Origin: Haliotis rubra
Taxonomy: Eukaryota
DNA: 64,000 bases
Assembly (NCBI RefSeq): GCF_003918875.1
Contig: NW_025765725.1
Location: 1,426,001-1,490,000 of the forward strand
Reading direction: 5' to 3'
The position numbers were made by a program, and so were the translations under genes. Shown here piece by piece: positions 7,747 through 63,230 of the stretch. The notes below the pieces were generated by a model, which worked only from the letters and a program-made list of their open reading frames with translations, searched no databases and was not told the DNA's origin. Every line of letters begins with the position of its first letter. Positions within the stretch are counted from its first letter, which is position 1.

Positions 7747-10003
7747 TATCTACCCTGGTGACATACAGGGTTGTATGACCACTCTTATCTACAGTAACAC
7801 TGACCATCTGGTGACATACAGGGTTATATGACCACTCTTATCTACAGTAACACTGACCACTTGTTGACATACAGGGTTATATGACCACTCTTATCTCCAG
7901 TAACACTGACCATCTGGTGACATACAGGGTTATATGACCACTCTTATCTACAGTAACACTGACCACTTGTTGACATACAGGGTTATATGACCACTCTTAT
8001 CTCCAGTAACACTGACCATCTGGTGACATACAGGGTTATATGACCACTCTTATCTACAGTAACACTGACCATCTGGTGACATACAGGGTTATATGACCAC
8101 TCTTATCTACAGTAACACTGACCATCTGGTGACATACAGGGTTATATGACCACTCTTATCTACAGTAACACTGACCATCTGGTGACATACAGGGTTATAT
8201 GACCACTCTTATCTACAGTAACACTGACCATCTGGTGACATACAGGGTTATATGGCCCTTCTTATCTACAGTAACACTGACCATCTGGTGACATACAGGG
8301 TTATATGACCACTCTTATCTACAGTAACACTGACCATCTGGTGACATACAGGGTTATATGACCACTCTTATCTACAGTAACACTGACCATCTGGTGACAT
8401 ACAGGGTTATATGACCACTCTTATCTACAGTAACACTGACCATCTGGTGACATACAGGGTTATATGACCACTCTTATCTACAGTAACACTGACCATCTGG
8501 TGACATACAGGGTTGTATGACCACTCTTATCTACAGTAACACTGACCACTTGTTGACATACAGGGTTATATGACCACTCTTATCTCCAGTAACACTGACC
8601 ATCTGGTGACATACAGGGTTATATGACCACTCTTATCTCCAGTAACACTGACCATCTGGTGACATACAGGGTTATATGACCACTCTTATCTACAGTAATA
8701 CTGACCATCTGACGACATACAGGGTTATATGACCACTCTTATCTACAGTTATACAGGGTTGTATGACCACTCTTATCTACAGTACATACAGGGTTATATG
8801 ACCACTCAGTAACACTGACCATCTGGTGACATACAGGGTTATATGACCACTCTTATCTACAGTAACACTGACCATCTGGTGACATACAGGGTTATATGAC
8901 CACTCTTATCTACAGTAACACTGACCATCTGGTGACATACAGGGTTATATGACCACTCTTATCTACAGTAACACCGACAATCTGGTGGCATACAGGGTTA
9001 TATGACCACTCTTATCTACAGTAACACCGACCATCTGGTGGCATACATAGAGAATACTACACGAGGTCTCATTACATACGAATTATACGAAACGAGTGTC
9101 CTTCCTATGGTATCTGACCGAGCGAAAGCGAGGTCAGATAACATAGGAAGGTCACGAGTTTCGTATAATTCGTATGTAATGAGACCGAGTATGGTATTTT
9201 ATTTATTACCCACGTCTTACATGCATTAAATTGACAAAATAGCGTATTTTTATTATTTTTGGTTTCAAACCGAAACCGGTTTCATAAAAAGGTTGCGGAA
9301 GAGTTTTGTACTGTAGTACAATATTTGCATGACGTCACACTGTAATGACGTCACTGCCTTGGTAACCGACGTCAGGATGCATGTCAGTTGTCATCGCCTC
9401 GTACAGCCTCCTACAGTAAACTACTCCGTAGCACCCCGTTTCTTGGTTTGCAGTTGCTTCGTTCGGCTAACATTACAGGTGGAAACATTGCGTTTCTGTT
9501 TTTCGACGGATATAATGTCTCAGTTCGACTCACAATTAAACAGCGACACGGCAACGTTCGCAATGTTTACATTCCCACAATGCATTTAAGTTGTAGAATG
9601 AATGAATTCACGTGTTCGTTATGAATGAAAACATAGTTACGTCAGAATGTGACCTAATTGAGAGGTCATCGGTTATCCAATCAAATCGTTAGAATCTCAG
9701 GTCAAGTCGTTACAACACAGGTCAACGCGATACGACACTCGTGTGACGTACGAGATTAGTATGCAACTACCCATACGTTGACCACGTGGGTAATAAAGGG
9801 TTATATGACCACTCTTATCTTCAGTAACAACGACCATCTGGTGGCATACAGGGTTGTATGGCCCCTCTTATCTACAGTAACACTGACCACTTGGTGACAT
9901 ACAGGGTTATATGACCACTCTTATCTACAGTAACACTGGCCATCTGATGGCATACAGGGTTATATGACCACTTTTGTCTACAGTAACACTGACCATCTGG
10001 TCA
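7747..10003. repeat. 53-bp minisatellite array, interrupted at 9048-9797
   Basis: Unit gacatacagggttatatgaccactcttatctacagtaacactgaccatctggt (e.g. 7813, 7866). About 24 units before and about 4 after the insertion. Confidence 0.97.
9048..9797. mobile_element. Non-autonomous hairpin-ended element with asymmetric inverted repeats and no TSD (Helentron/HINE-like or Crypton-like)
   Basis: Splits one repeat unit cleanly (gcataca|gggttatatg). Hairpin at 9053-9198; perfect 14-bp inverted repeat at 9202-9215 and 9784-9797; small stem-loop at the right end. Confidence 0.8.
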
Positions 10004-10117: not shown

Positions 10118-10373
10118 TGGTGACTCTGTGTTACAATGGTTGTCGGGGTAACCCTGTCTTACAAGGGTGGTCAGGATAACCCTATGTTACAAGGGTGGTA
10201 AAGGTAACCCTGTGTTACAAGGGTGGTCGAGGTATCCCTTTTTACAAGGGTTGTCGGGGTAGCCCTGTGTTACACGGGTGGTCAGGGTAACCCTGTATTA
10301 CAAGGGTGGTCGGGGTAACCCTGTGTTACAAGGGTGGTCGGGGTAACCCTGTGTTACAAGGGTGGTTGGGGTA
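10118..10373. repeat. 28-bp G-rich minisatellite, about 9 copies
   Basis: Unit gggtggtcggggtaaccctgtgttacaa (10301 to 10329 period). Confidence 0.93.
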
Positions 10374-10379
10374 AGGCAA

Positions 10380-23139: not shown

Positions 23140-26100
23140 TTAATAAATATAAGAGTGGCGAAGTCCATTTATAATACCTAATTTGCAACAGTCCTCTTTC
23201 GACCTGGTTTCCATGATTTGTCTGTCCGTTAGTAATTTGTCTACCCCCGAACATGCGTGCTCCTTGGACGAGGTGCCTTGCAGACAGACATCGCAAAAGT
23301 ACTTCTTGTCGGGTGGATCGAATAGGAAATGGTTTAAGTTTTTTATCAATGTGTAATGAAATTTACCGCCTTCTCGGCGAGGAATAAATGAATGCGTGGA
23401 ATCGGTGTGGGTGCAGATCAAACTCGATAGACGACGGTACCGTCATGGTCTCCGAAGACATTGATAGCCAATATGTTTTGCTTTTCTACTTTGGAGATTT
23501 GTGAAAGTGGTGTGGGTGTGTTTATTCCCACGAAATTTAAACCATAGTCTTTACTATAAGAGGAAGGACTGACGGGATTTAGGTCGATCTCAATGCCCAT
23601 ATTAAGCAGTTGCCGTCTCTGTTTTTACATTGATGAAGGCGTTCTTTCTTGAATAATAAGCGGGCAGTTCGAGGTAAGAGTCACTACGGAGTGGAGATGC
23701 ACTGACTACGTCCATGTCTAAACTAGTCTTTATTCATGTGAATTTAGGCCATCGGCCCATGGTACAACATTATACATTGGCAGCCTTCAAGCTGTAGCGA
23801 CGACAATTCTTAGCTTAGAAGATAAACAAGACAAGATTTCTTAAAACCAGAGGAGTAGCATTACTGATCAGTCGATTAAATTTACACAAGGTTGGATGGG
23901 TGAAAACATCTACAGGGATAAAACGTACAAATCAATAAGAAGTGGTACTCATTATTCTACATAGTTACAGGAACACATTTCACACAATCTTGATCTTTTT
24001 GGTTTCTTTATATGTCTACCAGTTTCTATATTCAGTTGGTGTGAACTACACCTGAACCTCGCTAAGGCAATACGGAATTTGTTGATAGTAATGCAATGGA
24101 GATATGGCTCAACACCCAAAATAAATTTAAATTGAGAATATAGGTCAGTTTTTGAGCCATTAGACAGCGAGGAATGCCATTCCTGTAAATATGTGTTTGG
24201 GCTCTAGATATAAATTCAGAAATAAAAAGATTTATATTAGGAATAAATTGATTTTCCCATACATATTCAAAACCCATTGTATACAATAAGTTTATTAATT
24301 TTGTTTTCTAGTTAATTTTACCATTTGAAGCATCTAACAGTAATAAATTGTAACATTTCTTAGGGAAACGTATAGAAGGCATATTTAACAGTTTGGACCA
24401 AAACATAATACAGCCTTTGTACGCAAAGATATACATAGGGTATCTCCCGAATTCGCCACGTACAACGTACAAATTCCGAAGGAGACATCACATTTCATGT
24501 GCTCAAATTTTGATAAACATTTCAAAATACAGAACAAAGCCTTGTTGTATTGTATATTAGAGCTGTCAAAATGATTATGCCATGACAATGTTTGTGAAAA
24601 TACTATTCCTAAATATCTATATGAAGAAACGCACTCAATTAATTTACCTCCTAGATACCATTTTTTGTGCTTAGTAAGGCTGCTACCATTTCTAAACCCA
24701 ACAATTTTAGATTTATTTAAGTTGACATATAGCTTATATTCCTTGCAATGCTGTTCAAGGACATTAATACGTTTTTGTAGCCCATAGATGGTGTCAGAGA
24801 GTAGAATGACAGCATCAGCAAATAGAAGGAGAAACAACTGAGTAAATTCTGGATGTAACTGTAATGGACTCAAGACACATCCTTGACGAACTCCAATATT
24901 ACAGTCGAACAACTGTGAAAAAGAATTATTGACTTTAACGCAAGATTTAACACAACCATAGATGAATTTGATGCAACCTAACATCTTGGGTGTTAATCCT
25001 TTCTGTTGCAAAACCATAATTTGATCTATTTACCAAATCAAATGCTTTCGAGAAGTCGACGAAGAAAGCATACAACTTACCCCTTTTCGATAGAATTCTC
25101 TGTGTAATAGAATGAAGAATAAAGATGTTGTCGACGGTTGAGTATCCTGTTCTAAAACCTGCCTGTCTCTCGGATATTTTAGCATAAGCTTCACTCCAAA
25201 ATTTAAGTCTGTCGTTAATCACTGCAAGTTAAAGTTTACTAGATACACCGAGAATAGTAATTCCTCTATAATTTGAAACTGAATCTCGATCTCCCTTTTT
25301 ATGAATAGGGACAATAAGAGCAACCGACCACTGAACAGGAAACACACCATTATCAAAGATCATGCTGAATAAAACTGTTAAATACGGAACAAGAAAATCA
25401 GAAGAAAACTTGAAAAATTCAGCAATTAACTTATCATCACCACCGATTTAGGGCACCTGGGGGTATTTATTGCTTTCAGAGTCAAGAATTGTTGTAACAT
25501 TAATATCCGTGGGCGGATATTTGCTATTGTAAGTAGCATTACCATCTATCGACCTAGCAGCGTCCATGTACAGAAACAGTCAAACCACTCTTGTAAAGAT
25601 ATATTGGGATGAACTACAGACGTCCCCGAAAACCTTTTGAATATGTTCCAAAAAGCTTAACTATTAAATTTTAATATTATAATTAAATTTTAATATTATA
25701 ATTAAATTTTAATATTATAATTTTATTATTTTAATAACCTCTCCCTCTCAGTTCGATAATAACTACATTCCCTATCGAACCACGTTGATCTTGGGTATTG
25801 ACTACAGAATTACTTCGTTTCGTACAATTAGCAGCTGTACATATTACATTTACCAATAAATCAACAACTTTATTAATGTTTTCAGACACAGCATCAAGAA
25901 AATTATCAAACATGTTTATACTGTCCTTGGACAATAACCTTTCTCTAAATATTTCAGCATTGGTTTCATCCCAAACAAACCGGTACTCGGCCCGCAGATG
26001 AACATCGGGATACTGCACGGGCTTAACGTGGCAGTCACGTGACTGAAACTGACACGATGACGGTAGATGGTCACTAGATACAATTACAAATTGTTTACAA

Positions 26101-48462: not shown

Positions 48463-48603
48463 GGGATTTAATAAAGTTAATTTGCACATTTATATAGCAG
48501 GATAGTAATTAGTAAACAATGTAACTTAATTGATTTAGTGCAGGGTTTTTTTTCATAAGATTAATTTGGGAGGTTATTTGAGTAGTTCGTGGTTATTTTC
48601 AAC

Positions 48604-49737
48604 ATGGATCAGTTTGACTTGTTTTCACTATCCAACGCTGGTTTCTCATCCAGTGAGCAGCCTGGTAATTTGAATCAGACGCATGTTATTCCTCCTGTGT
48701 CTGTAGCTACACGTCCAATGCAGTTTGTTACGTCCACACCTAATGTTCTTCCAGTAAATAGAGAGGATGAAGGTTGGGGGGTTGGAGTAGATATTGGAGT
48801 AGCTAACTCACAGAGTGCGACAGCGACTGGTTCAGTCCAACCGCCATTTCCGGGTTTGAATCTTGGTCGGATGGAGGATAGTGCAGCGTTTGATAGTGGA
48901 AGGATAGATAGTAGGTCCGTTCGTTTCAATTTAGCAAGTCGGCATTTGGGAAACCTTAACCAAGACATGATGGGTATCCCGTCAGCTAGTCTGGGTTTGG
49001 ACCCAAGGCCACTTATACCACAGCCTTTAGGTTCAGGATCGGCTGGAAATGAGACATATCATAGCGATCCAGCTGGATCTTTGCTTGCTAGTGGGTCATC
49101 TCAACTCTCACGAAGGGAAGTTAGACCTGATTGTTTTGATGGGAAATCTTGTGACTGGCAGGATTATGTGGTACACTTTGAACAGGTTGCCAATTGGAAT
49201 AGGTGGTCTGATAGCGAGAGAGCTCAACAATTGACAATGTGTCTCAGAGGTGATGCTCAGAGGTTACTCAGTAGCTTAACTATGGGTCAGCTCAATAGTT
49301 ATTCTGCCGTTAAGAACGTTCTGACACAAAAGTTTAATCCTAGAGAACGGTGTTTAGCTTACAGGAGTGAGTTTAGAAATCGTAAACAAGGCAGGGATGA
49401 ATCGGTCACTGATTATGGGTGTCAGCTAAGGAGGTTAGCACATCTGGCATATCCAGATATTCCATACGTGTCCATGGAGGTTCATTTGATCGACCAATTT
49501 TTGACTGGGTTGATAAACTTTAACATGAAGAAACATATTGCTTTCTCGCACCCTAGGACTTTAGACCAAGCTGTAGCATATGGTATTGAGTTTGAGGCAG
49601 TGGATGGTAGTCGGGGTCGGGAGCCAGATCATGTTGAAAGAATAGCTGTTGTCAATTCTACTTTACAGTCGGGTAGGGAAGAACCGTCCAGACTGCAGGT
49701 ACTTCTACCAGTTACATTTCCTTACAGGAGGAGTTAA
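48604..49737 (+). CDS. gag: Gypsy Gag capsid-like protein (about 377 aa)
   Basis: PDCFDGK..DWQDY..HFEQVA.WN.W...L...LRGDA...F...RKQ..DESV.DY...L..LA..AYP...DQFL.GL...P.TLDQAV; no Zn knuckle or protease downstream. Confidence 0.85.
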   Translation: MDQFDLFSLSNAGFSSSEQPGNLNQTHVIPPVSVATRPMQFVTSTPNVLPVNREDEGWGVGVDIGVANSQSATATGSVQPPFPGLNLGRMEDSAAFDSGRIDSRSVRFNLASRHLGNLNQDMMGIPSASLGLDPRPLIPQPLGSGSAGNETYHSDPAGSLLASGSSQLSRREVRPDCFDGKSCDWQDYVVHFEQVANWNRWSDSERAQQLTMCLRGDAQRLLSSLTMGQLNSYSAVKNVLTQKFNPRERCLAYRSEFRNRKQGRDESVTDYGCQLRRLAHLAYPDIPYVSMEVHLIDQFLTGLINFNMKKHIAFSHPRTLDQAVAYGIEFEAVDGSRGREPDHVERIAVVNSTLQSGREEPSRLQVLLPVTFPYRRS

Positions 49738-54741: not shown

Positions 54742-56041
54742 CAGTACAACCAGAAATTATTGAGAATTTAAAGATTGTAATTTTTTTTTTGTTTTCACTC
54801 ATTACTCACGTATTAAATGTGAATATTAGCAGAACATAACTCCAGATTCAAAGACAGGTGATCAGTTAGTATTTTGTCAAGTCACCATGGGCAGCAATGC
54901 AGGCTTCACTGCGGCTGGGCATACTACTGATCAAAGAAGTTAGAAAGTCGTGGTCCATGCTGTCCCAATATCGGACCACCTCTTCTTTCATTTCAGCAAT
55001 ATTTGTCAGATTTTTCTTATTGACACTTTCCTTCATAAGTCCCCAAACATTTTCTATTGGATTTAGGTCAGCGCTATAGCTTGGCCAATCTAATAATATC
55101 ATATTTTGGGTCCGAAACCAAGCCTGTGAATGCTTTGAACGATGTTTTGGGTCGTTGTGCTGCTGGAAAATCCACAAATTTCCATAGAACACGTGAGCAG
55201 ATGGAAGTAAATGTCCTTCGAGAATATCTGTGTACCGCTCACTGTTCATATTCCCTTCAAATACACAGAGGGGCGTTGCCCCTAACACAGATATGCCACC
55301 CCACACGTTAAATTTCGGACTGTACTTTGGGCGCTGATACAAAGGTTTTTCAGTTTGTTTGGTCCAGAATTTCAGTGTATTTGGAAACAGCCACACAGAA
55401 CTTTCATCTGAGAAAATCACATTGTCCCAGTTAAAATTTCTATGTTGTAAGCACCAGTTCAACCTTCGCTCCTTTTGTTCAGGTTTCATGATCGGTGGTG
55501 GAATTCCTCGACTTTTCTACCATTCCATTGCATGCAGCTCAGTTCTAGCTGTCTCCTTACAGACAGCCACAGTTCCTCTATCAATCATATCCAGCCTTAA
55601 GTTTTCTAAACTCCTTCGTTTGTTTTTAGAAACAAGAATACTCAAACTGCCTCCTGTCACCGACAGTCAATTTTCTGGGCCTACCTGCGCCTCCCTGGTG
55701 CTCAATGCCATATCCATTTGCAATATTTTTCAAAACACGATAAACAGTGAACAAAGGGATGCCTGTTCTACTTGAAATCACTTTAGCTGATCTGATGTCC
55801 TTGTTATAATACTCTAAAATCAACTTCCTCTTCTCTAAATCATCCATACTGAGGATCACTGAAAATGTCGTCTGCTAGCAAGTAAACAAAGGGGGATGAC
55901 TCTTCACAAACTAATGAAGAAGGATTAACGGAGTTGTCGCTCTTCAATGAAACCAAGCACTTGATAGCTGGTCAAGGTTGTTTATACTAGAAATCCAATT
56001 AAACATATTCCTAAAATTCTCAATGATTTCTGGTCATACTA
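54742..56041 (-). mobile_element. Full-length but inactive Tc1 (DD34E) transposon
   Basis: 28-bp imperfect TIRs, TA TSD (54740-41, 56042-43). Transposase split by frameshift (55859-55626 HTH/GRPR; 55489-54866 FSDES, QQHNDPKH with the second D changed to H, DLNPIEN 34 residues later). Confidence 0.95.
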
Positions 56042-58175: not shown

Positions 58176-61100
58176 TCATGTAATACCTACTTGGGTGTCC
58201 CACTTCTTTTGCATCAGATCACGGATGTAGGTTCTAAGGCTAGCTTTGTAATCGGAGTATGGAATAAGAAGAGGTGTCACAAATGTGTTCAGTGCTGCCT
58301 TAGCAGCAAGATCAGCCAGAGTATTTCCAGAAATGCCCACGTGGCTGGGTAACCAACAGAGAACGATGTCGCATTGGCCAGTAGCAAGCTCATTATACAA
58401 TTCAATAATTTCTAATAAAAGTGGATGTTTACAAGAAGGATTTTTAATAGCCTGAAGACACGAAAGAGAATCGGAAAAGATGATGTATTGTTCATATTTA
58501 CGGTGTTTATTAATATATTTAAGAGCTGTTAATATGGCGTTAGCTTCTGCTGTGAAAATAGAGCTATCATTTGGTAGTCGAGAAGATATTGTTCTGGAAC
58601 CAAGGACAGTGGCACATGCCACCGCGCCACCATCCTTGCACTCATCTGTAAATAAGGATTTGTATGTATTATATTTAGTTTTTAATTGATTATATTCTTG
58701 TTTATATTGTAGTTCATTAGTTTCAGATTTCTTAGACTTTGTCAGAATGAGGTCAACATCAGGCCTCACCAGTTGCCAAGGAGGAGAAGAAAGAAGACGG
58801 GAAGGAGATATATTTTCCAGCTCAATGCCGGCAGCAGAAATGGATGGCTTAATTCTGTGCCCAAGAGGCGGAACAAGAGAAGGTTTTTTGTTGTATAAAT
58901 CCTCATATAGGGAATTAAAGACACAGTTATATGCAGGGTTAGATTTGTTAGAGTACAGTTTGGTAATATACTGTAATGATAATTTGATACGGCGTTGTGC
59001 AAGGGATGGCTCTTCTGCTTCGACGTAGAGGCTGTCAACAGGTGAAGTTCTAAAAGAGCCAAGACATAGTCTTAGACGTTGGTGGTGGACAGAATCAAGT
59101 AGTTTTAGGTTGCTTTTGCAGGCTCCACCATATACGATGGAGCCATAATCAAGCTTCGAGCGGACCAGTGATGTATATAGGTGAAGGAGGGTAGCTTGAT
59201 CCCCTCCCCACTTTGAATTAGAAACAACTTTCAATAAATCGAGTGCCTTCAGGCATTTATTTTTCAAGGATTTGATATGTGGAAGAAAAGTTAAATGGGA
59301 GCCGAAAATTAGTCCCAAGAACTTGGCCTCCTTCACAACTTTGATGGGAGTGCCATTTAAAAATAATTCCGGGTCCTTATGCGGCTTATATTTTCTACAG
59401 AAGTGTAGACAATTAGTTGACGATTTTGAAAAAAAAGCCGTTTTCAAGACACCATGTATCTATTTTGTTAAAGCATAACTGCAGTTGCCGTTCAATAGTA
59501 TGCATTCTTTTACCACGACAGGAAACATTAAAATCATCCACAAATAACGATCCATCTATTGAATCGTTTAAAACTTTTGATAAACTATTTATCTTTATAC
59601 TAAAGAGTGTGACAGACAAAATACTGCCTTGTGGGACACCCTGATCCTGATTGTAATGATCAGACAGGGTAGAACCCACACGGACTTGAAATTGTCTGCC
59701 ATTTAAAAAGTTGGCTATAAATTGAGGCAAACGGCCTCGCAATCCGAAGCCATGTAAATCTCTTAAAATGTCATATTTCCACGTAGTGTCATATGCTTTT
59801 TCAAGATCAAAAACGATAGACACAGCGTGTTGTTTATTAATTAGAGCGTTTTTAACAAAGGATTCCAAACGCACTAAGTGATCGACAGTACTTCTGTTTT
59901 TACGGAAACCCCATTGTATATATGTTATGAGGTTATTTGTTTCCAATTACCAAACAAGTCGATTATTTATTATGCGTTCCATGTTTTTGCAAACACAGCT
60001 AGTTAGTGAAATTGGTCGATAATTTGACGGATCCGTATGATCACGTCCAGGTTTAGGTATTGGTACTACTATAGCGTCACGCCATGAGGGAGGAAATTTA
60101 CCTGACGTCCAAATATCATCCAAAATATTTAAAAGAGTCTCTAGAGAGGATTTTGGTAAGTGCTTCAGGAGTTGATAATGTATGTTATCAGCTCCTGTAG
60201 CAGTATCGTGAGCCTGTTCAAGAGCAATATGGAGCTCGAATAGAAAATAGTTCATTATAATCTTCCCCATTATCTGAATTGAAATTCATAGTTTTCTTTT
60301 TCTTGTTGTTTTTTATATTGTTGCTATTTAGGCACATAATTAGAAGAGGAAGAATGTTTAGCAAGAGTTTCACTAAGTTTATTCACAATATCTGATTTAT
60401 CGGTTAGTAATTGATCTCCATGTTTAAGATGATGGACGCTAGATTTTGAACCTTTACCTTTAATTTTCTGGACCATGTTCCATACCTTGGACATGGGCGT
60501 TCGAGAATCTATTTTGGAGACATAATTTTGCCAAGATTGGCGTTTATTCTGTTTAAAGTTACGCCGCGCTTTAGCATTTATAATTTTAAATTTATTTAAA
60601 TTATGCACCATAGGGTGGCGACGGAAATACTGTTCTGCTTTTTTCCTTGCCTTCCTAGCTTGTTTGCACTCATCGTTGAACCAAGGTTTTCGAATATGTG
60701 GAATTGCTGAGGACTTTGGTATACACTCATCAGCTCTGATGTTCAGTTTATCAGAAAAAAACCCATTTGATAGCATCAGGAACATCAACAAAAAAGTCAG
60801 GTTTAAGTTTCGTAACACACTGCAGTTCATACAGAGGCCAGTTAGCCTTTCCAAAATTCCATCTTGATGATGAAGGAACATCAGATGGGGTTACAGGTTT
60901 TAGTAAAGTAGGAAAATGGTCACTTCCACAGAGGTCATCGTGAGCTGACCATTCAAATTTATTCAGTAAGCTGGAGTCAGTTATTGACATATCAAGAGCT
61001 GAATATGTTCCTGTGCCAGGATGTAAATATGTATTTATATCATCATTACATATACATAAATTATTATTCGAAATGAAATCCTCCAAAACTTGACCTTTTG

Positions 61101-63230
61101 CGTTTGTGGTCACACCACCCCAGAGAGGGTTGTGTCCATTCAAATCACCCATGAATATACAAGGCTTGGGTAGTTGATCGTAGAGGGTTTGTAGATCAGC
61201 CTGCTGAAGAGTTGATGAAGGTGGAATGTACAATGAACAAAGAGTAAGTGTAACGTTCAAAGTAATTCGCACTGCAACTGCTTGAAGATTAGTTTTGAGT
61301 GTCACAGGGCTATGAATAACATCATGCCTTACAATGATTGATGATCCTCCAGTGGCTCTATCACCAGGTGGAGAAAAATAATGATATGCATTATAGTGAC
61401 GGAAGTTAAAAGTATTTGTCTGCAAGCAGAATGCTAAAGGTTTAAAGTCTTGGCCTAATAGGTGCAGTTCTTTAAGATTAGTCTCTAGGCCTCTGCAATT
61501 CCACTGAATAATTTGTGAAGTAACTATTTCTTCGGAGGGTTTATTGGGGATCTACCCCTTGCTTTTCCTTGAGGGCGATAGGCTATGTGCCCTAATTTGG
61601 ATGTTTTCGGACACATCCATGTCCTCTAAGGATCCGAACTTATTAAAAACTTGGATTTTGTCATTTGAACCTTTGGAGGCTCTGCTACTGACATTTTTGC
61701 AAATCATTTCTGGCTTTGATTTTATTTTTGGTAGGATGTTTCCCATTATTTTGTGATTGATGTTTTGGTATGGGCTGTGATGATGATGAGGATGATTGTT
61801 CTTGAGAAGATGACCGTTACTAAACTTGAACTGTTTTTGGAATTGATTCAGCAGTCTGAGTGGACTGGTTGAGTATATTTCAGGTTTTTCTGTATCCACC
61901 CATGTCAGATCAGTTTGGCACAGTGTTGATGAAGTGGATACATTTGATTTGTGACTGATGGCAGAGGGTGATCTCGTAACTGAGGCATAAGATGTGTTTA
62001 GTTCTGTTCGGGAAACAACAAGTTTCTTGGCATCAGTAAAACTGATATTCTGTGTGAAGTTAATTTTATTAATCTCCATTTGTTGATTCCAGATAGGACA
62101 TTGTTTAGAGTAAGATGAATGTGTCCCAGAGCAGTTGGCGCATTTTTTAATTTTATTATTGCAATCCTCAGTAACATGAGTTTTCTCACTGCAATGAGCG
62201 CATGTTACCGAGTACATGTATTGGCATCGTGTCCGTATTTTTGGCATTTGAAACATCTCAGTGGATTGGTAATATAAGTATCAACACTGATATTGCAATA
62301 TCCTGCTCTAATTGATTTTGGAATGGTTGGAGAAGAAAAATGGAAGAATTAAGTATTAGTAGGTTTTGTTTCAGAGTTTATTCGGGTTGTAAATCGTTTA
62401 ACAAATGTTACTCCTTGCTCTTTCATTTCTGACACGATATCAAGTTCAGTCAAGTCAGCAAACAATCGATCTCTATCTCAGACCATCCCTTTGCTTGTGT
62501 TCAGAGTCCTGTGCGGGGAACCGAGACCTGAACTCCAACGAACATTTGAGTAGACATCAGGTTGGGGGATTGTTGTTTTCTGCTACACTCAATAAGTAGA
62601 GAGCCTGAACGCAATCGTTTGATATTTCTGACCTCACCTGCGATACCTTGTATACCTTTTGATACTGCAAAAGGGTTTAATTTCACTGGTGATTTGTAAA
62701 GAGTCTCAATAACGAGAAATCGTGGCCAATATTCGAAGTGAGTTGGACGGTCGAGGTTCATCATCATCATTGTCAAGCTGACGTTTGTTTCTTTTAAGGG
62801 GGTTTGTGTAAGCCATAGCTAATGTAGCATGGTTCATCATCTGAGCTCCCCACCCACCACGGAGTATCATGAAGACAATGCAAAAAACAAGTAGGTCTCC
62901 AACTTGCAGCACCAAGGATACTCAGATGATATACTCCAGCAGAAGAACTAACAGAATAATTATCAATAGCTGTATTGGCCCATGAGCCACCGCCTTCTGG
63001 GCATACGATTCTAGGCAAATTTAACATTTTTTAAATTTATAATCAATATAAGCTCAGAGAATTAATTTGGCCAATACCCAAAAGAGGATCATTTAGTGAA
63101 ATAACATTTGTGCAAGATGAAAATAGAATGCACAGGGCTTGGCGTGACCAGCCGATTGATTGAACCGGGCCCATTCAACCACTCGTCTAAGTGAAGTAAG
63201 GGGCGAAGTGGTGTGTTGGACAAAGGGACG
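58176..63230 (-). mobile_element. Near-full-length Nimb/I-clade LINE (ORF1 Zn knuckles; ORF2 APE-RT-RNase H), frameshifted, 3' end lost in gap
   Basis: QWNCRGL, GDLNGH, GSDHFP; FDLEKAYD, GVPQGSILS, LFVDD; RNase H FTD..K, IFTAEA, IFSDS, WLPSHVGISGN. Confidence 0.93.

What the first reader, a model, noticed from the sequence alone, without database searches (positions are those of the whole stretch)
9048..9797. TSD-less 750-bp element whose hairpin appears built for single-stranded DNA (three tandem G.A mismatches and a c(GAAA)g loop)
Seen: the host 53-bp array gives the exact empty site (gcataca|gggttatatg), and there is no target duplication beyond an ambiguous single A. The left end is a 146-nt hairpin (9053-9198) with about 67-nt arms. 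Its mismatches look non-random: two CGAG/CGAG internal loops in the arms, a third beside the apex (cc-GA-gc-GAAA-gc-GA-gg), and some G.T or single mismatches. Just inside lies a 14-bp sequence (9202-9215) perfectly inverted at the far end (9784-9797), which has its own stem-loop. The interior is non-coding with TGACGTCA palindromes (about 9330, 9346) and a CCAAT. Established: tandem sheared G.A pairs and c(GAAA)g loops are unusually stable in folded ssDNA; folded ssDNA is the substrate for HUH rolling-circle transposases and for some tyrosine recombinases (integron attC, CTXphi attP). Inference: a non-autonomous element mobilised through an ssDNA intermediate. The layout resembles Helentron/HINE elements, but the target is not the usual T^T site, so a tyrosine-recombinase (Crypton-like) or unclassified partner is possible.
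Basis: partly seen in the sequence, partly recalled or inferred. Interest (0 to 1): 0.8.

Follow-up and report, generated by a model that had tools for sequence, protein, structure and literature searches.

The report
Abalone Helitron-like transposon, giant end hairpin
This is one copy of a very abundant, young, non-coding jumping element of an abalone-like genome, built like the rolling-circle Helentron/Helitron2 class, and unusual for a 146-base end hairpin marked by conserved one-strand G-A mismatches and for choosing targets that resemble its own joined ends.

Summary
Window 9048-9797 (or 9047-9796; one A is ambiguous) is an exact 750-bp insertion in a 53-bp satellite, with no target duplication. 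It carries a 146-nt hairpin (DNA fold -57.7 kcal/mol, z -14), three CGAG/CGAG loops, a GCGAAAGC apex and a perfect 14-nt inverted repeat.

It is not private or single-copy. There are 2314 first-look candidates and at least 42 full copies, about 98% identical to their consensus. All 31 aligned copies share the G-A loops. Head-to-tail arrays occur, some mixing sister families.

Five sister families share a homologous end module. In it, CGAG occurs 16 times and CTCG never; 38 of 40 CGAG letters are kept at about 70% overall identity; terminal-stem pairs covary.

The layout is that of non-autonomous Helentron/Helitron2 elements (HINEs): terminal inverted repeat, subterminal copy, then a stem-loop. 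The hairpin is far longer than usual. The target is RTAHA|N5-ATAY, not T^T.

The genome has intact Helentron genes and no other HUH enzyme family among those searched. No autonomous partner with these ends was found, and a tyrosine-recombinase partner is not excluded.

The scan found this family before on other DNA of this genome (s1-333075, s1-339747) and read it the same way.

Verdict: a new variant of a known kind; moderate interest.

The parts
7755..9047 (.). Host 53-bp satellite array, left part. Its last five bases (9043-9047, ATACA) are the left target half-site RTAHA.
   Evidence: TRF: period 53, 24.2 copies; target table
9048..9797 (+). The 750-bp non-autonomous element. Boundaries could equally be 9047-9796. 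In the conventional Helentron orientation it reads on the minus strand: 5' TTTATTACCCACGT ... GTATTCTCTA 3'.
   Evidence: At least 42 full-length genomic copies with the same ends; exact 53-bp empty site; 11 differences from the 31-copy consensus
9048..9065 (+). Terminal motif TAGAGAATACTACACGAG, conserved across the superfamily as TAGAG-R-W-TA-Y-TA-H-A-Y-GAG.
   Evidence: 465 genome matches when preceded by TAAA, control 0, in several family variants
9053..9198 (+). 146-nt terminal hairpin with arms of about 67 nt.
   Evidence: DNA fold -57.7 kcal/mol, z -14; present in all 31 copies
9062..9065 (+). CGAG motif 1, opposite motif 6 (9186-9189); together they form a tandem G-A loop.
   Evidence: 31/31 copies; kept in families F4, FB and FD
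9093..9096 (+). CGAG motif 2 (within ACGAGTGT), opposite motif 5 (9155-9158).
   Evidence: 29/31 and 30/31 copies
9119..9132 (+). Apex CGAG-CGAAAG-CGAG: two G-A pairs flanking the GCGAAAGC mini-hairpin (GAAA loop at 9124-9127).
   Evidence: 1169 genome matches against 30 for the control; 27/31 copies keep the apex 8-mer scored intact
9155..9158 (+). CGAG motif 5.
9186..9189 (+). CGAG motif 6.
9202..9215 (+). Subterminal inverted repeat TTTATTACCCACGT, three bases after the foot of the hairpin.
   Evidence: 100% complementary to 9784-9797; 25/31 copies identical; pairs with the far end in the whole-element ssDNA fold
9330..9353 (.). Two TGACGTCA palindromes (9330-9337 and 9346-9353), a motif shared by all sister families.
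   Evidence: 10 perfect copies in the 3.75 kb of L013, but only 3 in the whole 64-kb window
9681..9738 (+). Short 20-21-bp internal tandem repeat containing AGGTCA.
   Evidence: TRF
9784..9797 (+). Terminal inverted repeat ACGTGGGTAATAAA, which includes the CCACGTGG palindrome. The last base is variable between copies (A19, T6, C1, G1).
9798..10001 (.). Host satellite, right part. Positions 9803-9806 (ATAT) are the right target half-site ATAY.

Best explanation
The element is a non-autonomous member of the Helitron-like group 2 (Helentron/Helitron2, i.e. a HINE-type element). It most likely moves by rolling-circle, copy-and-paste transposition using a Rep-helicase supplied in trans.

Shown:
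- The insertion is exact and has no target duplication.
- One inverted repeat is terminal; the other is subterminal and is followed by a stem-loop that runs to the end of the element.
- The family is young and has on the order of a thousand copies or more.
- Insertion is orientation-specific at RTAHA|N5-ATAY.
- Head-to-tail arrays occur.
- The hairpin carries a conserved motif on one strand only.

Inferred:
- One strand is nicked at an end, peeled off by the helicase and folds.
- The giant hairpin stacks next to a 14-bp panhandle formed by the subterminal repeat and the far end, which brings the two termini side by side for cleavage and joining.
- The CGAG/CGAG tandem G-A pairs and the GCGAAAGC apex are favourable only on the window's + strand. 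The complement would carry C-T mismatches and a TTTC loop. So the + strand is the one that folds.
- The element's right end (AATAAA) fits the left target half-site. Each insertion therefore re-creates a target at its right junction, which explains arrays of mixed families.
For: Structure: 14-nt perfect asymmetric inverted repeat plus hairpin. This matches the published group-2 definition of 12-16-nt inverted repeats with a stem-loop after the 3' one and no target duplication (PMC11417382, PMC4067079, PMC7492417). The subterminal repeat is itself palindromic, as in mite and Culex HINEs (PMC4067079).

Mobility: 2314 candidates and at least 42 full copies with identical ends. Mean identity to the consensus is 98.3%.

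Arrays: C59 holds a run of adjacent copies with no spacer. L013 holds FB|FC|this family|FD. This family followed by F4 occurs at C2771 and at C145. Tandem insertions are reported for Helitrons and Helitron2 (PMC5148889).

Target: A at -1 in 26/26 insertions, T at +7 in 22/27, with P values from 1e-14 to 1e-2.

Functional constraint on the hairpin: all 31 copies keep it. Terminal-stem pairs change on both sides between families at positions 7, 10, 13 and 18. CGAG 16 against CTCG 0. 38/40 CGAG letters kept at about 70% identity. The + strand folds better than the - strand in 5 of 5 families.

Panhandle: it is present in the whole-element minimum-energy fold.

Enzymes: the genome encodes Helentron proteins, including an open 2350-aa frame with DUF6570, Helitron_like_N, PIF1 and Exo_endo_phos domains. 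No IS200-type Y1 transposase and no circovirus-type Rep was found.
Against: No autonomous element with these ends was found. None of the 34 Helitron-like loci held shows the end motifs. The one intact Helentron family whose 3' side could be read seems to end in a short palindrome followed by Ts, unlike this family (tentative).

The target is not the T^T reported for the group. The hairpin is roughly ten times longer than the usual 3' palindrome.

A tyrosine-recombinase gene lies 2 kb from one superfamily end at C466. An earlier scan note (s1-353951) reports G-A hairpins at the start of a tyrosine-recombinase element in this genome.
Confidence: 0.65

Rival explanations
1. The superfamily is mobilised by a tyrosine recombinase (Crypton-like). 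A circular form would recombine, through its joined ends, with a look-alike target site, perhaps on folded single strands as in integron attC or CTX-phi.
For: The target resembles the element's joined ends and is roughly dyad-symmetric (RTA-N8-TAY). There is no target duplication. The genome holds many tyrosine-recombinase genes (958 candidates). One of them, C466:72952-73293 with a 424-aa frame, lies 2 kb from a superfamily left end at C466:75247; about 0.04 such pairs are expected by chance.
Against: Cryptons are defined by the absence of inverted repeats and by 4-6-bp terminal direct repeats (PMC3212892); this element has the opposite. The first five flank bases to the right are random, so there is no shared crossover core with the constant TAGAG. 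The element's right end does not vary with the target's variable -2 base. The C466 gene lies outside the adjacent element, and two sister copies of that gene in listed contigs have no such end nearby.
Confidence: 0.12
2. It is an unclassified single-strand transposon whose enzyme is neither a Helitron-like Rep nor a tyrosine recombinase, or whose partner is extinct or absent from this assembly.
For: No partner was found by any route. Target choice and hairpin size depart from every described family.
Against: The family is young (98.3% identity to consensus), so a recent enzyme source is expected. The end layout matches group-2 Helitron-like elements feature for feature. No other HUH family was detected.
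Confidence: 0.15
3. It is a cut-and-paste MITE of a DDE transposon, or a SINE-type retroposon.
For: Small, non-coding and high-copy.
Against: There is no target duplication at an exact empty site. The ends are asymmetric, with only one inverted repeat terminal. There is no tRNA, 5S or 7SL head and no A-tail or 3' repeat. Arrays are strictly head to tail.
Confidence: 0.02
4. It is a local inverted duplication, a single-copy oddity or an assembly artefact.
For: None.
Against: 2314 candidates on hundreds of contigs; 31 copies with independent flanks.
Confidence: 0.01

Closest known systems
HINE / DINE-1-type non-autonomous Helentrons (mite HINE-Mo, Culex HINE-Cq, oyster Cg_HINE; PMC4067079, PMC7492417)
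   Same: No target duplication. 11-15-nt inverted repeats, with the 5' one at or near the terminus and the 3' one subterminal. The subterminal repeat is itself palindromic. A palindrome or stem-loop lies between the 3' repeat and the end. There are T runs at the boundary. Copy number is high, a short internal tandem repeat is present, and tandem insertions occur.
   Different: The 3' module is 154 nt with a 146-nt hairpin, against 38-60 nt with a 5-10-bp palindrome. The target is a 14-position motif, RTAHA|N5-ATAY, rather than TT or T-rich DNA. The hairpin has a conserved one-strand CGAG design. There is no microsatellite module. The autonomous partner has not been identified.
Fusarium FoHeli1/2 and other Helitron2 elements (PMC5148889)
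   Same: Asymmetric terminal inverted repeats with hairpins. The target is not T^T (TNAT followed by A or T). Joined-end circles have been detected and tandem copies seen.
   Different: Those are fungal, autonomous, 5-6-kb elements with short hairpins. There is no sequence similarity, and their target motif is shorter.
'HLE2-reverse' / proto-Helentron layout (PMC11417382)
   Same: The stem-loop lies outside the inverted repeat at the end that would be 5' if the folding (+) strand is the strand that moves.
   Different: In those elements orientation is defined by the gene. This element has no gene, so its orientation cannot be assigned.
IS200/IS605 (IS608) and IS91 bacterial HUH transposons
   Same: Works alike in several respects: single-strand logic, subterminal hairpins, no target duplication, and insertion next to a short sequence that resembles the element's own cleavage site at the other end. 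In IS608 the target is read by pairing with the element's DNA.
   Different: The host is a eukaryote. No Y1 transposase is present in the genome. The hairpin is far larger. Pairing-based target reading is only a hypothesis here.
Crypton (PMC3212892)
   Same: No classical target duplication; a circle-plus-target recombination would be imaginable.
   Different: Cryptons lack inverted repeats and have 4-6-bp terminal direct repeats. This element has inverted repeats and no direct terminal repeats.

Membership tests
Helitron-like group 2 (Helentron/Helitron2), non-autonomous (HINE) | No target-site duplication | tested here: met
   The empty site restores an exact 53-bp satellite monomer. No repeated flank in 26 independent insertions.
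Helitron-like group 2 (Helentron/Helitron2), non-autonomous (HINE) | Short (about 11-16 nt) inverted repeats, one terminal and one subterminal | tested here: met
   14 nt, 100% complementary, at 9202-9215 and 9784-9797; kept in most of the 31 copies.
Helitron-like group 2 (Helentron/Helitron2), non-autonomous (HINE) | Stem-loop between the subterminal repeat and that end of the element | tested here: met
   Hairpin at 9053-9198, z -14; much longer than in described members.
Helitron-like group 2 (Helentron/Helitron2), non-autonomous (HINE) | Insertion between T and T | tested here: not met
   In Helentron orientation one junction base is always T. The other junction base is T in 19 of 27 copies if the variable base is counted as flank, and the base beyond is T in only about 38%. 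The window's empty site holds a single T (CCCTGT). The real preference is RTAHA|N5-ATAY. Published Helitron2 families also depart from T^T (PMC5148889), so this feature is not universal for the group.
Helitron-like group 2 (Helentron/Helitron2), non-autonomous (HINE) | An autonomous partner with the same ends that encodes Rep-helicase (with or without endonuclease) | tested here: inconclusive
   Helentron genes exist. No held Rep locus has these ends.
Canonical Helitron (group 1) | 5' TC, 3' CTRR with a short hairpin 10-12 nt from the end, insertion between A and T | tested here: not met
   The ends are TAGAG... and ...GTAATAAA on one strand, and TTTATTAC... and ...CTCTA on the other. Inverted repeats are present.
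Crypton (tyrosine-recombinase DNA transposon) | No inverted repeats; 4-6-bp direct repeats at both termini | tested here: not met
   A perfect 14-nt inverted repeat is present. The left end TAGAG and the right end ATAAA are not direct repeats. The flank RTAHA resembles the right end but does not covary with it.
Crypton (tyrosine-recombinase DNA transposon) | Element encodes, or is partnered by, a tyrosine recombinase | tested here: inconclusive
   One PF00589 gene lies 2 kb from a superfamily end. It could not be fetched.
IS200/IS605 | Y1 HUH transposase present | tested here: not met
   PF01797 gave no match in the genome, while 6 of the 14 control genomes matched.
DDE-type MITE | Symmetric terminal inverted repeats flanked by a target duplication | tested here: not met
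   Asymmetric repeats and no duplication.

The most novel reading that the evidence does not exclude
The target may be chosen by base pairing with the element's own folded strand, as in bacterial IS608.

In the folded + strand, the stretch GGTATT-TTA-TTTAT (9193-9206) acts as a splint. One side pairs with the element's 5' arm (AATAC) and the other with its 3' end (ATAAA). The target, RTAHA-N5-ATAY, looks like those two ends joined.

Three of its degenerate positions accept what wobble pairing with the splint would allow: R at -5 opposite T, Y at +9 opposite G, and A or G in 21 of 27 at +6 opposite T.

If true, this would be a DNA-guided, in principle re-targetable, single-strand transposon in an animal. 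The G-A-marked hairpin would also show for the first time which strand a group-2 Helitron-like element folds.
Probability: 0.12. Interest if true: 0.85.

Novelty: new variant of a known kind. Interest (0 to 1): 0.45.

Why it matters
To my knowledge, and in the papers read here, group-2 Helitron-like elements (Helentron, Helitron2, HINE/DINE-1) are among the most abundant repeats of many invertebrates, yet nothing is known biochemically about how their ends are recognised or which strand moves.

This family gives a natural handle on that question. Its end hairpin has mismatches that are favourable on one strand only and are conserved across diverged sister families. It also has a well-defined 14-position target that mimics its joined ends and explains how mixed head-to-tail arrays build up.

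These features turn 'which strand folds' and 'how is the target read' into simple oligonucleotide experiments.

For genome annotation, the practical point is that the T^T rule and the short-palindrome rule used by detection software would miss or mis-trim this superfamily.

Tried and rejected
**Search for the autonomous partner**
- BLAST of the element, and regular-expression scans for both end motifs, found nothing in the 34 Helitron-like loci L031-L064.
- Long-hairpin scans of the 10-kb downstream flanks of five Rep genes found nothing.
- Comparing the two 98%-identical Helentron copies (C2101, C2412) gave only a tentative, different 3' end.
- The second Helentron family runs into 210-bp tandem repeats and other repeats.
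- The public homologue from Haliotis asinina (P0001, 77% identity; contig L065) has no such ends; a 12-mer match there is chance.
- P0002/L066 comes from an unrelated AT-rich organism.
- Pfam scans of open frames in the flanks of the 30 copy loci and in the window found only unrelated transposon or host domains.
- The sister family F4, first suspected of being long enough to code, is a roughly 1.1-1.6-kb non-coding family.

**Other checks**
- Subfamily test of the variable last base: T-ending copies are scattered over haplotypes, so the base is not inherited.
- Apparent 'truncations at the hairpin apex' turned out to be an internal deletion of one arm (L002) and a plain truncation (L003).
- The Rfam MIR2655 hit (29.5 bits against a threshold of 122) is only hairpin likeness.
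- Replitrons were considered and set aside: they have direct terminal repeats and have been described only from plants, algae and protists (PMC10288648).

I did not try to read more genome letters through pattern searches.
- The search of earlier findings by sequence returned nothing, as the operators had warned.
Full report
**1. What is at the site**

A 53-bp satellite runs from 7755 to 10001. It is interrupted after ...GGCATACA (9047) and resumes at GGGTTATATG (9798).

The 13 bases before the break and the 40 bases after it add up to one exact 53-bp monomer. So exactly 750 bp were inserted, with no duplication and no loss. Because the flank ends in A and the insert also ends in A, the boundaries are 9048-9797 or 9047-9796.

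The left 151 nt fold as single-stranded DNA into a hairpin covering 9053-9198, at -57.7 kcal/mol. Shuffles average -15.8 (z -14.35), and none of 200 shuffles folds as well.

The fold has three symmetric 2x2 loops. In each, a CGAG on one arm faces a CGAG on the other. The apex reads CC-GA-GC-GAAA-GC-GA-GG.

Three bases after the foot of the hairpin lies TTTATTACCCACGT (9202-9215). It is the perfect inverse of the last 14 bases, 9784-9797.

The interior has no ORF above 86 aa, no tRNA and no Rfam family. The one Rfam match scores 29.5 bits against a gathering score of 122. It holds two TGACGTCA palindromes.

Only the far end's 'own stem-loop' is weak.

**2. It is a mobile, young, abundant family**

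Searching the window's own genome (1.38 Gb, 2855 contigs) gave 2314 first-look candidates. Among the 40 that were scored there are at least 42 full-length places, 96-98% identical, that start and stop at the same bases.

Thirty-one distinct copies were aligned. Mean identity to their consensus is 98.3%, and the window copy differs at 11 positions.

Every copy has the hairpin. The six CGAG motifs are intact in 29-31 of 31 copies, and the apex 8-mer scored in 27 of 31. The G-A loops are thus a property of the family and not of this copy.

The closest public relative of a Helentron protein encoded elsewhere in this genome is from Haliotis asinina, at 77% identity. This agrees with earlier scan notes that call the genome an abalone. 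From memory, the assembly size and contig number fit the published Haliotis rubra assembly; this is unverified.

**3. Sister families and selection on the hairpin**

The flanks of two copies (L008, L013) contain four other families, here called F4, FB, FC and FD. They begin with the same 18-nt motif, TAGAG-R-W-TA-Y-TA-H-A-Y-GAG, followed by a hairpin and then TTTATTAC. Where the right end could be read (FC, FD and this family) it is G-TAATAAA; F4's right end did not look like this.

With TAAA in front, that left-end motif occurs 465 times in the genome, and the reversed control occurs 0 times.

The end modules of the five families are homologous at roughly 70% identity, while the interiors are unrelated. 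Within these modules:

- CGAG occurs 16 times and its complement CTCG never. About one CGAG would be expected from the window's background rate.
- 38 of the 40 CGAG letters aligned between families are unchanged. The binomial P is about 1e-4 at 70% identity, with the caveat that local alignments favour anchors.
- The terminal stem that pairs the conserved end motif changes on both sides at positions 7, 10, 13 and 18 in the four families where it forms.
- The + strand folds better than the - strand in five of five families, by 0.3-3.7 kcal/mol, in an energy model that may carry no special bonus for sheared G-A pairs.

The apex CGAGCGAAAGCGAG has 1169 exact genome matches against 30 for the control. 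By coordinates it also sits about 76 nt from the left end of typical F4 copies.

That tandem G-A pairs in a pyrimidine-GA-purine context and the GCGAAAGC mini-hairpin are unusually stable in DNA is established knowledge that I recall. I did not test it here.

On the other strand the same places would be C-T/T-C mismatches and a TTTC loop. So the design is strand-specific, conserved, and accompanied by covariation.

**4. Target choice**

This analysis uses 26 left flanks and 27 right flanks that are not other copies. In the window's + orientation the insertion site is R(-5) T(-4) A(-3) H(-2) A(-1) | N5 A(+6) T(+7) A(+8) Y(+9).

Counts include A at -1 in 26/26 (P 2e-14), A at -3 in 21/26, T at +7 in 22/27 and A at +8 in 21/27. 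The satellite monomer carries a perfect site, CATACA|GGGTTATATG.

The last base of the insert is unusually variable (A19, T6, C1, G1). It does not follow subfamily haplotypes. So it is either a target base, which would put the element at 9047-9796 with a target RTAH|W, or an imprecisely copied end base.

Either way the published T^T rule is not met. Published Helitron2 families also deviate from it: TNAT followed by A or T in Fusarium (PMC5148889).

The element's own right end, AATAAA, fits RTAHA. Every insertion therefore re-creates a full target at its right junction. This accounts for the spacer-free head-to-tail arrays:

- a run of adjacent copies of this family at C59;
- FB|FC|this family|FD in L013;
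- this family followed by F4 at both C2771 and C145.

**5. What kind of element**

The published definition of group-2 Helitron-like elements and their non-autonomous HINE derivatives has four parts: no target duplication, 11-16-nt inverted repeats, a stem-loop after the 3' repeat, and insertion at TT (PMC11417382, PMC4067079, PMC7492417).

Read on the minus strand, this element is 5'-TTTATTACCCACGT ... ACGTGGGTAATAAA-hairpin-CTCTA-3'. That is the same layout, including a subterminal repeat that is itself palindromic (CCACGTGG), as in mite and Culex HINEs.

The genome encodes Helentron proteins. One open 2350-aa frame has DUF6570, Helitron_like_N, PIF1 and a C-terminal endonuclease domain, and it has a 98%-identical second copy. 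No IS200-type Y1 transposase and no circovirus-type Rep was detected. Helitron-like Rep is therefore the only HUH enzyme seen.

I rate this classification at about 0.65. The differences from described members are the size of the hairpin module (154 nt against 38-60 nt), the long target motif and the G-A design.

**6. The missing piece**

I could not link the family to an autonomous element.

- None of the held Rep loci shows the end motifs.
- The intact Helentron family appears to end in a short palindrome followed by Ts, unlike this family (tentative).
- The Haliotis asinina homologue's 16-kb contig has no such ends.

One tyrosine-recombinase gene lies 2 kb from a superfamily left end at C466, where about 0.04 such pairs are expected by chance. 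It lies outside that element. An earlier scan note (s1-353951) reports G-A hairpins at the start of a tyrosine-recombinase element of this genome, and I could not check it.

The defining Crypton features are absent: Cryptons have no inverted repeats and have 4-6-bp terminal direct repeats (PMC3212892). The right flank shares no core with the constant TAGAG. The right end does not track the target's variable -2 base. I therefore keep this rival at about 0.12.

**7. How it most likely works**

Everything in this section is inferred.

- A Rep-helicase nicks one end, unwinds the strand and releases it at the other end.
- In the free strand the hairpin forms, and the subterminal repeat pairs with the far end. 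This panhandle is part of the minimum-energy fold of the whole 751-nt strand.
- The 3' end then lies next to the unpaired 5' TAGAG, ready for joining or for transfer to a target.
- The strand asymmetry points to the window's + strand as the folding strand. On the conventional orientation that is the bottom strand. So either the hairpin end is really the 5' end, as in the 'HLE2-reverse'/proto-Helentron layout (PMC11417382), or the hairpin acts on the strand that stays behind.

A more speculative reading (about 0.12) is that the target is read by pairing with the same splint, GGTATT-TTA-TTTAT, that holds the element's two ends. The target looks like the joined ends, with a one-base difference in spacing. 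R at -5 (opposite T), Y at +9 (opposite G) and A or G at +6 fit wobble pairing. H at -2 and the lack of G at +8 do not.

**8. Verdict**

A single-strand intermediate is not shown, and the tyrosine-recombinase idea gains no support.

The same family was already found by this scan on other pieces of this genome (s1-333075, s1-339747) and read the same way.

- the target motif and its likeness to the joined ends;
- the explanation of mixed arrays;
- cross-family conservation and covariation of the hairpin;
- the absence of other HUH enzymes;
- the negative partner searches.

It is a new variant of a known kind, of moderate interest.

Noticed in passing
L013 (G000:C113:4146097-4149847), reverse strand; also window 9330-9353: Every sister family carries one to three perfect TGACGTCA palindromes (the cAMP-response-element consensus) in an otherwise unrelated interior. 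There are 10 in 3.75 kb of L013 but only 3 in the whole 64-kb window. In the ssDNA fold of this element the two copies pair with each other. They could be a binding site for a host factor or for the transposase.
   Followed up: partly
L026 (C2578:1663066-1664472) and L020 (C2101:2058159-2059504): In two independent places a full copy starts directly after AGGTCA inside another copy (at element position 657 or 677), and the rest of the interrupted copy is missing on the far side. This is not a simple nested insertion and remains unexplained.
   Followed up: partly
G000:C2101:2302741-2309791 (L031, L060) and C2412 (L037, L061): An apparently intact 2350-aa Helentron gene (DUF6570, Rep, PIF1 helicase, AP-type endonuclease) with a 98%-identical second copy. 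It is followed by 38-bp tandem repeats. The closest public protein is from Haliotis asinina (77% identity).
   Followed up: partly
L060:1660-5000 and L061:1-5189: Downstream of that Helentron lie tandem units of about 2.1 kb. Each ends in a hairpin with a c(GAAA)g loop (GGTCTTCAGAC-GAAA-GTCTGGAAGACC), about 20 nt, and an (ATT)n tail. This looks like the 3' end of a CR1/L2-type LINE or SINE.
   Followed up: no
G000:C466:72952-75264: A tyrosine-recombinase gene (424-aa open frame, minus strand) lies 2 kb to the left of a superfamily left end (TAAATAGAGGATATTATATGAG, plus strand). It could not be fetched.
   Followed up: no
window 10119-10374: A second satellite, 28-bp unit GGTAACCCTGTGTTACAAGGGTGGTCAG, about 9 copies, lies 120 bp after the 53-bp array. 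Its core is the inverse of part of the 53-bp unit (TTGACATACAGGGTTA / TAACCCTGTATTACAA), so the two arrays may share an origin.
   Followed up: no
window 24388-25017, 48589-49734, 54869-55489, 58179-59447, 60754-61425: The rest of the window is rich in transposon remains: reverse transcriptase, retrotransposon gag, a DDE_3 (Tc1/mariner-type) transposase fragment, RNase H, and the endonuclease of a LINE.
   Followed up: partly
L002 (C59:272031-275781), reverse-strand position about 820-840: One array member has lost one hairpin arm and the apex (element positions about 16-86) while keeping both ends. This is the kind of deletion long palindromes suffer during replication.
   Followed up: yes
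G000:C2771:99414-101662 and C145:136883-138791: The same pair, this family directly followed by family F4, occurs at two loci. This suggests a composite that moved as a unit (read-through of an end) or a segmental duplication.
   Followed up: no
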